A DNA stretch of 64,000 bases from the sequence record OP991903.1; one strand, given 5' to 3'. A model generated the notes under the pieces. It did no database searches. It saw only the letters and a list, made by a program, of their open reading frames with translations, and was not told where the DNA came from. Position numbers and translations under genes: made by a program. This document shows positions 50,042 through 57,676 of this stretch, in pieces. Positions within the stretch are counted from its first letter, which is position 1; the number at the start of each line of letters is the position of its first letter.

Positions 50042-50418
50042 AGCAGGTCGCGGTTGAAGGTAACCACTGCGTGAATCTAGCGCCTGACCGCATCTACCGG
50101 TTATCGCATTACGTAGACGATGGGTATGTGGTCACCCATGCAAAGTTGGTTGGGGTATTGTTTAACAACGGGCAGCACTGGGTTCCGCCCCACGATATGG
50201 CGGTTCTCTTAGATGACAATTTCCTGAAGAAACAGGAAGTCGAAGTCGAAGTACCTGGGGTCCATGGGATGATTCGCGTGAACGGAAGTCAGCGGGGTAA
50301 CGCCGCAGTGAACCTGCGATATACGCCACATGACCCGAACATGCGAGTAGGGGTAGACCAATATCAACTCCGTCTCTTCTATGTTAAGTCACCCACCATC
50401 TCCGTGAGCAACCTGTAA
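49900..50418 (+). CDS. hypothetical protein
   Basis: 172 aa, AAGGA RBS. Confidence 0.7.
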   Translation: MSASARATQFLQSVQSIISSGLESDYEKAQRIARLASENYSAEIEPLKQVAVEGNHCVNLAPDRIYRLSHYVDDGYVVTHAKLVGVLFNNGQHWVPPHDMAVLLDDNFLKKQEVEVEVPGVHGMIRVNGSQRGNAAVNLRYTPHDPNMRVGVDQYQLRLFYVKSPTISVSNL

Positions 50419-50729
50419 TGGAAAAGAAGATGAACATCCCTCTCGACGGTACCCCAGTAAACGTAGAACACGTCTTTGCTGCTTACCCTGACCTGATTCA
50501 CTTCGATGTGGACACGTTGATTAAGCAAGCAGCGTTCTTCCGTTGGCCAGGCACCACATTAATCAGTTGTACGTTGACGCTGGACAACGGTCATTCCGAA
50601 ACTGACGATGCCCGCCCGCGTAATGACTCGATGTACACTGATGCTGACGGTATCCGTGGCGCGTTCATGAAGGCACGCAACAAGTGTTGGGGCATCAAAG
50701 CCTATCTGGACCGTAGCAAGAAAGCATAA
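50418..50729 (+). CDS. N4 Gp49 / Sf6 gp66 family protein
   Basis: TLISCTLTLDNG......RP......G...A...A..K.W...AY pattern. Confidence 0.55.
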   Translation: MEKKMNIPLDGTPVNVEHVFAAYPDLIHFDVDTLIKQAAFFRWPGTTLISCTLTLDNGHSETDDARPRNDSMYTDADGIRGAFMKARNKCWGIKAYLDRSKKA

Positions 50730-51327: not shown

Positions 51328-51702
51328 TCAAACGGCCGCCATTCTTCCGGTCTCGACTTGGCGACGCTGATAGTGGGAGTGGCCGCCGATGCGAACCGAC
51401 CAGTACATCACCTGGTACTTCCACCATTTGAAGCCTAAGCGCTTCATGTTCTTTTTGAGCAGTTTGTCCGCTTGCTTGCGCGGCATTGCGCCACCGTAGC
51501 AATAGTCATGCACAATACACGCAGGCAGGTCACGGCCAAAGCGTGGGAAGACGACCCGTGCAAACCAAGGAGCGCTGTTACCATCTGACTCGAAGTCGGC
51601 TGGTACAATCATTTCCGGTGTGGCGTAGGTGTCGTTGAGGCGCACCATTTCCTTATCGTAAAGGAAGGTGATAGATGGATTTGGCAATGAGTACTGGGGC
51701 AT
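51328..51702 (-). CDS. DUF1353 family protein
   Basis: VPADFESDG.SAP, A.IVHDY.Y, RKQAD, MYWSVRIGG. Confidence 0.8.
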   Translation of the reverse strand: MPQYSLPNPSITFLYDKEMVRLNDTYATPEMIVPADFESDGNSAPWFARVVFPRFGRDLPACIVHDYCYGGAMPRKQADKLLKKNMKRLGFKWWKYQVMYWSVRIGGHSHYQRRQVETGRMAAV

Positions 51703-51834
51703 CTCTAGCTTCCTTTAGTTGCGGTTACTCACAACTAGGTGGCGAAATCGCCACAAACTCGACCAACTAACGCTTCGTTAAAAGGTACGGTTAAGCTGTT
51801 CCATATGTACTCATTCACTACGCTGGAGTTTGCC

Positions 51835-52347
51835 ATGTCAAACCACATTCTGTACGGGGAAATGCACACTCGAGATGACCGCGACCGTATTGAACGGTTG
51901 ATACGGGAAGCTCACCGCGAAGCTCCGTTTAAGTACCTTCTGACCGAAGAGGCGGGTCCGTATCGCTACCTGAGCAAGTTAGCCTTACAGCAAGCCATCA
52001 AAGGGCAGATGTACAGTATCAGTGACCGTTCGTTTAAGTTGGGCATCGAGTTGGGGATTCCGGTTATTGGGATTGACAACTGGGATGACAAGACCTACGA
52101 GCGGGATAAGAAGTGGCCAGACGGTCGCTACCTGGATTGTCGATACAGTTTCAACATCCGTGAGCACCAGATGGTAAGAACATTGAACGAGTACGCCCCG
52201 AAAGGCCGCGTCGCGCTCATTGTCGGGGACAGTCACCTGCGCAGCCAGCGAAATCTGGTGATGGGAACGGCATCCCCGCTATACACGCAGTTCGTTGATA
52301 AATCAGGGTTTGAGATTATCCGCTCACCGAAAGGTGAGGCACGTTGA
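51835..52347 (+). CDS. EreA/ChaN/Tiki-superfamily-like putative metalloenzyme
   Basis: ILYGEMH, LLTEE, IGID, ALIVGDSHLR motifs; ATG 51835 with GGAG RBS. Confidence 0.5.
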   Translation: MSNHILYGEMHTRDDRDRIERLIREAHREAPFKYLLTEEAGPYRYLSKLALQQAIKGQMYSISDRSFKLGIELGIPVIGIDNWDDKTYERDKKWPDGRYLDCRYSFNIREHQMVRTLNEYAPKGRVALIVGDSHLRSQRNLVMGTASPLYTQFVDKSGFEIIRSPKGEAR

Positions 52348-52413
52348 TTAAATTTCATTCCTTTTTTACGCCGACCTGTTATTAGATGAATAACCACAGA
52401 AGAGAAAAGGCTT

Positions 52414-52584
52414 ATGTCTACACCTGCCAAAAAAGATGACGATTTGTTTGACGGTGAGTTTAACCTCCCGGACGAGGTCCTGGAGCAAGCGGCTGCCCAT
52501 GCAGATGCAGTAGCTGACCGTCCGCCGGAAGTTGAGTACAAACCTGGCGACGATGAATGCGAGGGTGGTGCCTGCAAAATCTAA
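52414..52584 (+). CDS. 56-aa acidic protein ending in NrdA-like redox tail (not in ORF track)
   Basis: MSTPAKKDDDLFDGEFNLPDEVLEQAAAHADAVADRPPEVEYKPGDDECEGGACKI; AAAGG RBS. Confidence 0.75.
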   Translation: MSTPAKKDDDLFDGEFNLPDEVLEQAAAHADAVADRPPEVEYKPGDDECEGGACKI

Positions 52585-52635
52585 GCATGTAACACTACGG
52601 TGGTTCGGGGGCACGGAGGCTCCCGTAACAATTTT

Positions 52636-52658
52636 AAGAACTATATTACCGTAGTGAC
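52636..52658 (+). promoter_or_regulatory. early-type promoter
   Basis: TATATTAC at 52642-52649 followed by CGTAGTGAC. Confidence 0.7.
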
Positions 52659-52685
52659 TGCTAAGTTAATAGGAGCAGGTACAAC

Positions 52686-53261
52686 ATGTTAATTCGACGT
52701 AAAGTAGCGCCTAGTCAATTCACCTTAACGCCGTGCCCGGACTGCAATTCGACCAACTTGCAAATCCTGGGTTCGTACAAACAAGGTGAGTTCCGGATAC
52801 GTTGCAGGCATTGCGGTCATCGTGGTCGCAACTCGCACACGTTGTTGTCCGGAATCCTGAACTGGGTAAGCCCGTGGCGAGATGACCTTCGCCATGCGCT
52901 CATCTCCCCGTTCACTGCTCGCGACATTCTGAAGAAGAACCTAAGTGAGTTTCAGGGGAAGGTAGATATACGTCCAGACTACCTGACATCATTAAACGCG
53001 ACAATTGTTCGTGTGTTTACGCCGGGCGCGGTGTATATCGCCGTCTATTACGTTACGCCAGATGGTGGAGATGGTTTTGCCGTCTTTGTTCCCGGTGATT
53101 ACGGAACACTCGGCACTCTCGTTGGTACGTTCACCGACGGGGGATACCAAACAATCGTTGAAAACCCACTGCTCGACCAAGAGGTGTTTTTAGAATTCCT
53201 CAAGGTGGTTCGTCGGGTTATCAGGGAAATCATGATAAGTCAACTGACCGAAGGAAAATAG
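52686..53261 (+). CDS. Lar-like Zn-finger protein with C-terminal extension
   Basis: LTPCPDC-x18-CRHCG.RG matches the Lar restriction-alleviation family pattern. Confidence 0.5.
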   Translation: MLIRRKVAPSQFTLTPCPDCNSTNLQILGSYKQGEFRIRCRHCGHRGRNSHTLLSGILNWVSPWRDDLRHALISPFTARDILKKNLSEFQGKVDIRPDYLTSLNATIVRVFTPGAVYIAVYYVTPDGGDGFAVFVPGDYGTLGTLVGTFTDGGYQTIVENPLLDQEVFLEFLKVVRRVIREIMISQLTEGK

Positions 53262-53262
53262 G

Positions 53263-53433
53263 ATGAGTAACGCAGACCCGAAGCTTCTGAAGAAGCCGTT
53301 CTTGACGGGGACGATTTTAAACAAACCCTGGGCATGTTTCCCGACCGACCAGGGACCGGTAATGGTTAGACTACCCGAACAACCTTCGGTGTACCACATT
53401 ACCCTCTCAGACGAAAAGCCGAGGGCTGCATGA
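53263..53433 (+). CDS. small hypothetical protein (56 aa, not in ORF track)
   Basis: MSNADPKLLKK...EKPRAA; AAGGA RBS; ATGA overlap with next gene. Confidence 0.6.
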   Translation: MSNADPKLLKKPFLTGTILNKPWACFPTDQGPVMVRLPEQPSVYHITLSDEKPRAA

Positions 53434-56398: not shown

Positions 56399-56677
56399 AT
56401 GTCTGTGAATAACTTTGACTATCAGGAAGTGGAAGAGATAATTGATTTCCTCTCAACCATCACCCTCTGTTATCATTTTAATAATGGTAATGCTCGGAAA
56501 ATAAAGAAGTGCGCGCGCTCCATGAAAGCACGATTCACTCGCCGTACTCCGAGACGTTACTGCGATAAAATAATAGAGGAGCCTGAGGATGCGTTCTTCA
56601 TCATTAACACAATTAGCAGCGGTCACTTTAACGTTCTGGCCCTGCGCGATTCTTCAAAGCAATTCCTATCCGTTTAA
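56399..56677 (+). CDS. hypothetical protein
   Basis: 92 aa. Confidence 0.6.
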   Translation: MSVNNFDYQEVEEIIDFLSTITLCYHFNNGNARKIKKCARSMKARFTRRTPRRYCDKIIEEPEDAFFIINTISSGHFNVLALRDSSKQFLSV

Positions 56678-56710: not shown

Positions 56711-57676
56711 GTGAATAACTTTTTTGTATTTTATCACGCACTGTGCATCGACGGATTTTCCGCCGCTGCAACTTTGTGGCGTGCGTTACCGAGCGCAACT
56801 TACCGACCAGTCCACTATAACTCCCCGCTGCCGTTAGAAGGAGTTGGCCAGGGCGATACGCTGTACTTCGTTGATTTTGCACCACCGCCTGAGGAAATCA
56901 GTAACCTCGCGAAGTTAGAGCCTGCTCGCGTTGTTATCCTCGACCATCATGCGTCAATGGTTGACGCGTATGCAAAAGCGGACTGCCCAGAGTTTCAAGC
57001 CGTGCTCCGTGCTGCTAATGTTGAGCTGACATTAGACGGAACACGTTCTGGTGCAGGGTTGACCTGGGCGCATCTGTACCCGGACACACCGCTCCCCTAT
57101 GTACTCGCTTGTGTACAAGACCGTGACCTCTGGCAGTTCAAACTTCCAGACTCGCGGGACTTCTACGAGTTCTTCATCCTTTTCCTCAACAAACCGTTCT
57201 CTGAGTTCAACCGTTTAATCGACGATGTTGGCGTGGTTAACGACGGTGTCTTCTCCTCGACCATGGGTGCCACGGCATACCTCGGCGTGAAAGAAGCCTC
57301 AGAAGCGTTGAAGGAAAAACGAGATGTCGAGATTCAATTCCACCTCGATAACTGTCTGACCGAATGGCCGTTTGGCGATTCAGGTAAGATGGCTGTCGTG
57401 AACTGTCACCGCCCTATTACCTCGGAACTTTGCGACCGCATCAAAGATTCATATGACGTGGTTGCTTGTTATTTCCATCGTAAAATGGGGTCGATGGTTT
57501 CACTGCGTTCAAAAGACTATAACGTCCGCTTTCTGGCTGAGAAGCTGGGCGGGGGTGGTCATGCGAACGCGGCAGGTGTGGAGCTGTTTTTCGCCATTAC
57601 GCCGGAAACACTTGCTGCCATGCTCTTCGATGCTAACAAAGAACTTCATGCTGCAAGTGAGGCTGAGAATGGATGA
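56711..57676 (+). CDS. DHH/DHHA1 family phosphoesterase
   Basis: YH..CIDG..AA, VDF, LDHH, SLRS, GGGHANAAG. Confidence 0.9.
   Translation: MNNFFVFYHALCIDGFSAAATLWRALPSATYRPVHYNSPLPLEGVGQGDTLYFVDFAPPPEEISNLAKLEPARVVILDHHASMVDAYAKADCPEFQAVLRAANVELTLDGTRSGAGLTWAHLYPDTPLPYVLACVQDRDLWQFKLPDSRDFYEFFILFLNKPFSEFNRLIDDVGVVNDGVFSSTMGATAYLGVKEASEALKEKRDVEIQFHLDNCLTEWPFGDSGKMAVVNCHRPITSELCDRIKDSYDVVACYFHRKMGSMVSLRSKDYNVRFLAEKLGGGGHANAAGVELFFAITPETLAAMLFDANKELHAASEAENG

What the first reader, a model, noticed from the sequence alone, without database searches (positions are those of the whole stretch)
52414..52584. Stand-alone mimic of the ribonucleotide reductase C-terminal redox tail
This 56-aa acidic, probably disordered ORF (below the track cutoff) ends DDECEGGACKI, nearly identical to the E. 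coli NrdA tail DDGCESGACKI. In NrdA that CxxxxC pair carries electrons from thioredoxin or glutaredoxin to the active site. No nrdA body is attached or adjacent. A free tail could re-reduce host or phage RNR in trans to boost dNTP supply, complement a tail-less phage NrdA, or act as a decoy or competitor for Trx/Grx and the RNR active site. I know of no description of such a gene.
Basis: partly seen in the sequence, partly recalled or inferred. Interest (0 to 1): 0.85.

Follow-up and report, generated by a model that had tools for sequence, protein, structure and literature searches.

The report
Free-standing ribonucleotide reductase redox tail
A jumbo phage that makes no ribonucleotide reductase of its own encodes a conserved 56-residue protein ending in a near-copy of the cysteine-pair tail that recycles the host enzyme, so it probably acts on the host's DNA-precursor supply, but its function is untested.

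Summary
The ORF is real. It lies at 52414-52584 (+) and encodes 56 aa. It is annotated as hypothetical in Erwinia phage vB_Ea277G, which is this window, and is identical in PhiEaH1. Its last 11 residues match the extreme C-terminus of Escherichia and Erwinia NrdA at 9 of 11 positions, including both redox cysteines and the terminal K-I-stop. Chance expectation in the window is 0.

It is not a decayed nrdA. The 218-kb genome has no nrdA or nrdB. The gene is under purifying selection. Orthologues in distant jumbo phages keep the tail unchanged.

It belongs to a large unnamed family of 40-60-aa proteins. I found more than 250 clusters: chimalliviruses of Enterobacterales, a T7-like phage, and Neisseria/Eikenella, where the gene sits between iscS and iscU. 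164 of 180 members end C-x4-C-x-x.

Three findings tie the module to ribonucleotide reductase:
- It is fused to a deoxyribonucleotidase directly upstream of a phage nrdA that has lost its own tail.
- It is fused to a MazG-like enzyme.
- Phage PCH45 carries the peptide and an orphan host-like NrdB, but no NrdA.

Best reading: a trans-acting redox tail for host NrdA. Whether it raises or lowers host enzyme activity is unproven. No description of it was found in the literature searched.

The parts
52414..52584 (+). Gene for the 56-aa stand-alone tail protein (whole ORF including the stop codon).
   Evidence: Compared with the orthologue in L205, dN is 0.117 and synonymous sites are saturated.
52435..52476 (+). 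N-terminal acidic-aromatic motif, residues 8-21 (D-D-D-L-F-D-G-E-F-N-L-P-D-E). It is the possible docking element. In other lineages it resembles the alpha-binding C-terminal heptad of NrdB.
   Evidence: Alignments. In the position-specific scoring matrix (PSSM) test this protein is not significant (p=0.16). Klebsiella-phage orthologues and IMG/VR members reach p<=4e-4.
52471..52518 (+). Predicted central helix, residues 20-35. This is the linker between the two motifs.
   Evidence: AF2 model. pLDDT is 67-78 in this stretch only.
52549..52581 (+). NrdA-type redox tail, residues 46-56 (D-D-E-C-E-G-G-A-C-K-I). The Cys pair is at residues 49 and 54, spaced C-x4-C, and the tail ends at the C-terminus.
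   Evidence: 9 of 11 identical to Escherichia NrdA 751-761. Invariant in phage orthologues. 164 of 180 family members end C-x4-C-x-x.
52585..52685 (+). Downstream intergenic region. A block of about 35 nt (about 52625-52665) is conserved with the related contig L205 and lies just ahead of the next gene. It is a possible regulatory element of the neighbouring gene, not of the tail gene.
   Evidence: 80 of 101 nt identical, with a perfectly conserved core; the core is not a frequent motif in the window. No sigma-70 promoter or intrinsic terminator flanks the ORF.

Best explanation
The gene encodes a small, mostly disordered, acidic protein. Its C-terminus is a working copy of the class Ia ribonucleotide reductase alpha-subunit (NrdA) redox tail.

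In NrdA, the C-x4-C pair at the end of the protein reduces the active-site disulfide after each turnover. Thioredoxin or glutaredoxin then reduces the tail again. The phage has no RNR of its own. I infer that its free tail joins the host's Trx/Grx -> tail -> NrdA active-site relay in trans and helps the phage draw dNTPs from the host enzyme.

**Shown:**
- The tail matches the NrdA tail and sits at the same position, the extreme C-terminus.
- It is conserved and under purifying selection.
- This genome has no nrdA or nrdB.
- The module travels with nucleotide-metabolism genes.
- A natural case exists where a tail-less NrdA has a tail-bearing neighbour.

**Inferred:**
- Binding to host NrdA.
- Electron transfer.
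- The direction of the effect (supporting rather than blocking).
For: 1. **Tail identity and position.**. The same 25-residue R1 tail is a solved glutaredoxin-1 substrate complex (PDB 1qfn_B, listed).

2. **Motif is the NrdA terminus.** In 120 bacterial genome hits, most are the extreme C-terminus of ORFs of about 760 aa or of ORFs cut by the locus end. I confirmed about 85 of these as nrdA by the nrdB gene that follows.

3. **Both cysteines, the spacing and the K-[IL] end are kept.** This holds in 164 of 180 family members. It also holds across Erwinia, Klebsiella, Serratia, Dickeya and Yersinia jumbo phages. Keeping both the attacking and the resolving cysteine fits full dithiol-disulfide exchange better than a dead-end trap.

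4. **Purifying selection.** dN is 0.117. There are 30.2 synonymous against 13.8 non-synonymous differences, and dS is saturated.

5. **A natural case of tail relocation.** In L209/L210 a deoxyribonucleotidase (PHROG hit at 3e-15) carries the module. It is encoded 54 nt upstream of nrdA-nrdB. That NrdA is 70% identical to E. coli NrdA, keeps the sequence around the catalytic cysteines, and has an insertion with a weak intein hit where E. coli C439 aligns. It stops about 20 residues early, so it has no Cys pair. All 80 related viral NrdAs keep a Cys-pair tail.

6. **A second fusion.** The module is also fused to a MazG-like nucleotide pyrophosphohydrolase.

7. **PCH45.** Serratia phage PCH45 has the peptide and an orphan NrdB that is 80.6% identical to Escherichia NrdB. 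It has no NrdA in 212.8 kb. That phage therefore appears to depend on host NrdA, which argues against the peptide blocking that protein.

8. **No overlap in viral contigs.** In two IMG/VR scans, 60 stand-alone or fused tails and 48 true NrdA termini never fall on the same contig.
Against: - No experiment, expression data or complex structure exists.
- The host NrdA already has its own tethered tail, so the gain from a free one is not obvious.
- In several lineages the N-terminal motif looks like the NrdB C-terminal heptad that binds NrdA. Docking at that site would compete with NrdB, which points to inhibition.
- All natural small disordered RNR regulators that I know of (Sml1, Spd1, Hug1, Dif1) are inhibitors.
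- The bacterial members sit in the isc operon or beside redox genes, not beside nrd genes.
- The tail-less-NrdA case is a single lineage, seen in two contigs from what may be one study.
- The contig-level lack of overlap used only exact tail motifs and partial contigs.
Confidence: 0.45

Rival explanations
1. Competitive inhibitor of host RNR, working like Sml1 and binding at two sites. The N-terminal acidic-aromatic motif sits in the cleft of NrdA that normally holds the NrdB C-terminal tail. The C-terminal mimic takes the path of NrdA's own tail to the active site, or occupies Trx/Grx. Radical transfer and re-reduction are both blocked.
For: - NrdB-like heptads score strongly in several lineages. 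L145 scores 21.9 bits and L149 20.4 bits, both with shuffle p=2e-4. Klebsiella phages score 15.7 bits with p=2e-4 to 4e-4.
- Over 24 family members, the true column order of the matrix ranks 69th of 5040 permutations.
- The peptide is disordered, like known RNR inhibitors.
- The module appears in T7-like phages, which are known to feed on host DNA breakdown (plus established knowledge of T7).
Against: - The window's own protein does not match the NrdB heptad without a gap (p=0.16).
- This phage and PCH45 have no NrdA of their own. PCH45 also brings a host-like NrdB that needs host NrdA.
- The tail-less phage NrdA next to a module-bearing gene implies a helping role.
- Both cysteines are conserved, which an occluding peptide would not need.
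Confidence: 0.25
2. General portable Trx/Grx-dependent dithiol adaptor or decoy, not specific to RNR. The tail is simply a very good Trx/Grx substrate. The variable N-terminal part would deliver it to other clients (for example IscS/IscU in Neisseria), or soak up Trx/Grx during infection.
For: - In Neisseria and Eikenella the gene lies between iscS and iscU, under an Rrf2 regulator.
- In Moraxella it lies next to an Old Yellow Enzyme-family (OYE) flavin reductase and an Rrf2 regulator.
- In Pasteurella testudinis it lies among redox genes.
- In a T7-like contig it lies directly upstream of a family A DNA polymerase gene. T7's polymerase of this family uses host thioredoxin (established knowledge).
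- The tail is also attached to unrelated domains.
Against: The only fusion partners with a recognisable function are nucleotide-pool enzymes, and one of them is embedded in an nrdAB cluster. The match to NrdA goes beyond the Cys pair to the acidic run before it and the exact C-terminal end. In some NrdAs it extends to a P-E-V-E stretch upstream.
Confidence: 0.15
3. Precursor of a secreted or modified peptide (RiPP or bacteriocin-like, with a double-glycine-type leader), or a small metal-binding peptide. The likeness to NrdA would be convergent.
For: Bacterial members have a V-E-G-G motif ahead of a 16-residue Cys-loop peptide. That motif loosely recalls a double-glycine leader.
Against: The phage members, including this one, lack the G-G site. 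No maturase, peptidase or transporter is seen beside the gene in the window, in Neisseria, Moraxella or Pasteurella, or in the T7-like contig. The tail must stay at the extreme C-terminus with K-[IL], as in NrdA.
Confidence: 0.05
4. Non-functional remnant of a decayed nrdA, or a chance ORF.
For: The tail is homologous to nrdA 3' ends. It shares 25-29 of 36 nt with enterobacterial nrdA ends.
Against: No other NrdA-like coding sequence is found upstream or anywhere in the genome. The gene has its own start codon. It is under purifying selection. It is kept as a 45-60-aa ORF across distant phages with an unchanged tail. Chance expectation is 0.
Confidence: 0.02

Closest known systems
C-terminal redox tail of class Ia RNR alpha subunit (E. 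coli NrdA C754/C759; PDB 4r1r sequence; tail peptide bound to glutaredoxin-1 in PDB 1qfn)
   Same: Same C-x4-C pair, same acidic residues before it, same G-A-C-K-I end at the extreme C-terminus. 9 of 11 residues are identical.
   Different: It is not attached to any RNR body. It is a separate 56-aa gene product with its own N-terminal motif and central helix, in a genome with no RNR.
Small disordered RNR regulators of fungi (Sml1, Spd1, Hug1, Dif1). Sml1 is reported to compete with the R1 C-terminal tail.
   Same: Small, largely disordered, and plausibly acting on the large subunit at the step where the tail regenerates the active site.
   Different: No sequence relation was detected. Those proteins are not copies of the tail, carry no redox Cys pair of this type, and are inhibitors. 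Here the comparative evidence leans towards support of the enzyme.
Split nrdA of Aeromonas phage Aeh1 (PMC3045599, found)
   Same: RNR large-subunit function divided between separate polypeptides in a phage.
   Different: In Aeh1 both halves of the catalytic body are present and reassemble. Here only the last 11 residues are present and no body exists. The closer parallel is the L209/L210 arrangement (tail-less NrdA with the tail on a neighbouring protein).
NrdB C-terminal peptide that binds NrdA (the basis of classical peptide inhibitors of bacterial and herpesvirus RNR)
   Same: In many family members an N-terminal D-[FL]-x-x-F-x-L heptad matches the NrdB C-terminal consensus.
   Different: In the family the motif is internal, not C-terminal. 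In the window protein it has one extra residue and is not statistically significant.
PHROG families phrog_14561, phrog_24014 and phrog_38753 (unknown function)
   Same: The tail module of the fusion protein P0155 hits them, at E=1e-8 for the best one. They therefore appear to be collections of the same kind of small tail protein.
   Different: The window protein hits none at E<=0.001. None of the three has a name or function.

Membership tests
Class Ia RNR alpha subunit (NrdA) | C-terminal Cys pair (C-x4-C in the enterobacterial type) at the extreme C-terminus, preceded by acidic residues | tested here: met
Class Ia RNR alpha subunit (NrdA) | Catalytic ten-stranded barrel, ATP-cone and lgN/lgC domains in the same polypeptide or genome | tested here: not met
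   tblastn of NrdA against the whole genome finds only the 11-aa tail. No RNR Pfam domain in 38 large proteins or in the 656-aa and 1286-aa proteins.
Class Ia RNR alpha subunit (NrdA) | Tail is reduced by thioredoxin or glutaredoxin and reduces the active-site disulfide | not testable with these tools
   Biochemical property. The only support here is that the same tail is a solved Grx1 substrate (1qfn).
Split or fragmented phage nrdA (Aeh1 type) | Two or more nrdA fragments in the genome that together make a full NrdA | tested here: not met
NrdB C-terminal NrdA-binding peptide (mimic) | Heptad matching the consensus of 45 NrdB C-termini | tested here: inconclusive
   Window protein: best score 2.5 bits, shuffle p=0.16. 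Klebsiella-phage orthologues: 15.7 bits, p=2e-4 to 4e-4. Over the family, 69 of 5040 column permutations score as well or better.
Sml1-type RNR inhibitors | Sequence membership in a described family | tested here: not met
   No Pfam family at E<=1. No NCBIfam hit. No PDB relative.
Sml1-type RNR inhibitors | Small disordered protein that binds the large subunit and competes with its tail | not testable with these tools
   Disorder is consistent. Binding could not be tested, because no multimer prediction was available.
RiPP or double-glycine-leader peptides | G-G cleavage site plus a neighbouring maturase, peptidase or transporter | tested here: not met
   No G-G site in the phage proteins. The neighbours have no such domains.
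Thioredoxin or glutaredoxin fold proteins | Trx fold with a C-x-x-C active site | tested here: not met
   No Pfam hit. The model has a single helix.
Unnamed family of stand-alone tail proteins (defined in this report) | 40-60 aa; N-terminal acidic-aromatic motif; linker; acidic run; C-x-G-G-A-C-K-[IL] at the C-terminus | tested here: met
   Profile searches found 250 proteins at E<=1 and 76 clusters at 50% identity with E<=0.001. Alignments.

The most novel reading that the evidence does not exclude
The roughly 45-residue module is a portable tag aimed at RNR. An NrdB-tail-like anchor and an NrdA-type redox tail let any carrier dock on class Ia NrdA and take over the active-site regeneration step in trans.

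- Nucleus-forming phages that lack NrdA would use the free form to exploit the host enzyme. PCH45 would pair it with its orphan NrdB.
- Some phages have moved the tail off their own NrdA onto a deoxyribonucleotidase.
- Neisseria and its relatives keep a chromosomal copy inside the isc operon. That copy would couple iron-sulfur status to dNTP synthesis.
Probability: 0.3. Interest if true: 0.9.

Novelty: new variant of a known kind. Interest (0 to 1): 0.8.

Why it matters
RNR sets the supply of DNA precursors and is a drug target, including in Neisseria gonorrhoeae. Regeneration of its active site by the tail has always been treated as a built-in part of the large subunit.

A widespread gene family that encodes this tail alone would show that the step can be supplied, tuned or hijacked in trans. 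The family occurs in phages without RNR, on accessory enzymes next to a tail-less NrdA, and in the isc operon of Neisseria.

It would also give a first handle on how nucleus-forming jumbo phages that lack NrdA obtain dNTPs. It would assign a role to dozens of 'hypothetical' small phage genes. And it offers a natural peptide scaffold that recognises bacterial class Ia RNR and its reductants.

Tried and rejected
**Searches that led nowhere**
- phmmer of the 56-aa protein, and of its last 20 residues, against PDB found no NrdA. The query is too short. The tail match had to be shown by tblastn and by the pattern scan.
- Pfam, NCBIfam and PHROGs have no family for the window protein.
- Sigma-70 promoter and terminator scans around the ORF were at or below chance. 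This is as expected for a PhiKZ-like phage.
- Two conserved intergenic strings are not repeated motifs in the window.
- Both metagenome scans returned nothing confirmable.
- tblastn with one IMG/VR subfamily against cultured phages found nothing.
- P0155 has no cultured relatives that carry the module.
- A paper on FBKp24 does not mention RNR.

**Ideas rejected**
- Decayed nrdA remnant, split nrdA, RiPP precursor, chance ORF.
- The idea that bacteria with the stand-alone gene have lost the tail on their NrdA. The 7mdi NrdA keeps its own tail.

- The C-terminal ends of E. coli NrdA and NrdB, before any tool had shown them.
- A nine-residue C-terminal peptide of a human herpesvirus RNR small subunit.
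- A double-glycine leader consensus.

Apart from those four motifs, none of these was given to a tool, and none is written in this report. Every comparison reported here rests on sequences that tools returned.

Full report
**What the window is.** Bases 51700-53300 are 100% identical to Erwinia phage vB_Ea277G (OP991903.1, 218.5 kb, genus Iapetusvirus), and window coordinates equal record coordinates. They are 99.4% identical to PhiEaH1. The phage is PhiKZ-like and appears to form a phage nucleus. It has a chimallin homologue, a PhiKZ-type capsid protein, a divergent family B DNA polymerase and multisubunit RNA polymerase pieces, and an annotated tubulin-like protein.

**The observation.** Both GenBank records annotate it as hypothetical.
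- The PDB sequence of E. coli R1 shows that NrdA ends with the Cys-pair tail at residues 751-761.
- tblastn of an Escherichia NrdA against the phage aligns exactly those 11 residues to window 52549-52581, with 9 identities.
- The degenerate pattern for this tail plus a stop codon occurs once in the window and never in 100 shuffles.
- AF2 predicts one helix (residues 20-35) with low-confidence ends, mean pLDDT 61.8.

**Not a remnant, not a split gene.**
- The whole genome (window plus L003-L006) has no other similarity to class Ia NrdA or NrdB.
- 38 proteins of 450 aa or more have no RNR domain.
- Two of the four long proteins left out of that set are chimallin and a fibre-like protein. The other two, ORFs of 2222 and 1504 aa, were not scanned against Pfam.
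- Against a contig about 80% identical (L205), the gene shows dN 0.117 with saturated synonymous change. The differences are 30.2 synonymous and 13.8 non-synonymous, similar to its neighbours.
- Orthologues at 46-50% identity in Klebsiella jumbo phages keep the last ten residues unchanged.
- Immediate neighbours are not conserved between these phages. Only loose synteny with a DHH phosphoesterase 4 kb away remains.

- Most hits are the extreme C-terminus of an ORF of about 760 aa, or of an ORF cut by the locus end. About 85 of these are followed by nrdB.
- Seven hits, five in Neisseria, were short free-standing ORFs with the same end.

**A large unnamed family.**
- A profile of phage and Neisseria sequences found 250 small proteins at E<=1. 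An exhaustive search found 76 clusters at 50% identity.
- 164 of 180 sequences end C-x4-C-x-x. The commonest endings are C-E-G-G-A-C-K-I (89 sequences) and C-A-G-G-A-C-K-I (31). Most of the 16 exceptions are read-through or truncated metagenome calls in which the tail is internal or cut off.
- Members occur in Neisseria and Eikenella between iscS and iscU, and in Moraxella and Pasteurella testudinis among redox genes.
- One member lies in a T7-like contig between the helicase-primase and DNA polymerase genes.
- Members occur in many jumbo phages of Erwinia, Dickeya, Klebsiella, Serratia (PCH45), Yersinia (phiR1-37) and Stenotrophomonas. All are annotated as hypothetical.
- The NrdA in PDB 7mdi keeps its own tail. 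I recall this entry as the Neisseria gonorrhoeae enzyme, but no tool confirmed the organism. If that is right, the bacterial genes are extra copies, not split-off tails.

**Links to RNR.**
- *Viral contigs.* In IMG/VR the two commonest tail variants gave 115 hits: 48 true NrdA termini, 60 stand-alone or fused tails and 7 internal chance matches. No contig appears in both of the first two classes.
- *Fusions.* Most fused partners are unknown domains. Two are nucleotide-pool enzymes: a 5'-3' deoxyribonucleotidase (P0155) and a MazG-like pyrophosphohydrolase (P0157).
- *Tail-less NrdA.* P0155 is encoded directly upstream of nrdA-nrdB.
  - That NrdA is 70% identical to E. coli NrdA over residues 1-740.
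  - It keeps the conserved sequence around C225, C439 and C462.
  - It has an insertion of about 260 residues, with a weak intein Pfam hit, where E. coli C439 aligns.
  - It ends about 20 residues early, with no Cys pair and no room for one before nrdB.
  - All 80 related viral NrdAs end in a Cys pair.
  - This looks like a natural relocation of the tail to a neighbouring protein.
- *PCH45.* This phage carries the peptide and an orphan NrdB 80.6% identical to Escherichia NrdB. It has no NrdA in its 212.8 kb. It therefore appears to rely on host NrdA.

**The N-terminal motif.** I built a scoring matrix from 45 distinct NrdB C-termini.
- Several lineages start with a heptad that matches the NrdB end. 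The best are 21.9 and 20.4 bits; Klebsiella phages score 15.7 bits (shuffle p<=4e-4).
- Over 24 members, the true column order ranks 69th of 5040 permutations.
- The window protein has one extra residue in the motif and is not significant (p=0.16). Neisseria is not significant either.

I treat this as a lead. If it is real, it implies docking in the NrdB-tail cleft of NrdA.

**Mechanism.** I commit to a trans-acting redox tail that engages host NrdA and its Trx/Grx reductants, and that supports dNTP supply for a phage without RNR (confidence 0.45).
- The main rival is an Sml1-like competitive inhibitor binding at two sites (0.25).
- A general Trx/Grx adaptor or decoy stands at 0.15.
- The RiPP/metal-binding and remnant readings are unlikely.

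Binding, electron transfer and the direction of the effect are inferred.

**Novelty.** There is no matching curated family and no paper in the searchable library. I rate it a new variant of a known kind.

Noticed in passing
L337:24783-25889 (Serratia phage PCH45, NC_091964.1 124783-125889): PCH45 encodes a class Ia NrdB that is 80.6% identical to Escherichia NrdB. tblastn finds no NrdA anywhere in its genome. A phage beta subunit that apparently must pair with the host alpha subunit is unusual in its own right.
   Followed up: partly
L209:1215-6180 (Logan SRR31968090 contig; also L210): A phage-like cluster of DHFR, deoxyribonucleotidase-with-tail, nrdA and nrdB. The NrdA has an insertion with a weak intein hit where E. 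coli C439 aligns, and it lacks the C-terminal Cys-pair tail.
   Followed up: yes
L130:6001-6210 (Neisseria meningitidis) and L207:4001-4147 (Eikenella): A conserved small ORF of about 42-48 aa with the NrdA-type tail lies between iscS and iscU, downstream of an Rrf2 (IscR-like) regulator. It is annotated only as hypothetical, when it is annotated at all.
   Followed up: partly
window 52625-52665: A block of about 35 nt ahead of the next gene (52686) is almost perfectly conserved with contig L205, although the rest of the spacer diverges. It is a possible phage promoter or regulatory site.
   Followed up: partly
window 51328-51702 (-): A DUF1353 protein (Pfam E=1.7e-16) on the opposite strand. 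RefSeq calls it a 'tail assembly chaperone' in PhiEaH1, which the domain hit does not support.
   Followed up: no
window 52686-53261 (+): The 191-aa downstream protein has a weak N-terminal zinc-ribbon signature (C-P-x-C ... C-x-x-C; several Pfam zinc-ribbon families at E about 0.01-0.04, all below their cut-offs).
   Followed up: no
window 56711-57676 (+) and 56399-56677 (+): A DHH-family phosphoesterase and the small gene before it are the only nearby genes shared with the Klebsiella jumbo phages (32% and 27% identity). This marks a loosely syntenic early-gene region.
   Followed up: partly
L206:1-1971 (OP991903.1 112216-114186, outside the window): A chimallin homologue (Pfam PF25677, E=2e-14). 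The phage is therefore expected to build a phage nucleus. The GenBank record labels it hypothetical.
   Followed up: yes
L200:1193-1582 and L147:1249-1419 / L327 (IMG/VR contigs): The same tail is also attached to an N4 gp49/Sf6 gp66-family protein and to small zinc-ribbon proteins. The window itself probably has a stand-alone gp49/66-family gene nearby (50418-50729), judged by its position relative to L205.
   Followed up: no
window, + strand, reading frame 3 (coordinates not recorded): A stop-to-stop ORF of 186 aa contains a C-G-F-S motif, the monothiol glutaredoxin signature. This is probably chance. No Trx- or Grx-like active-site motif was otherwise found in ORFs of the phage genome.
   Followed up: no
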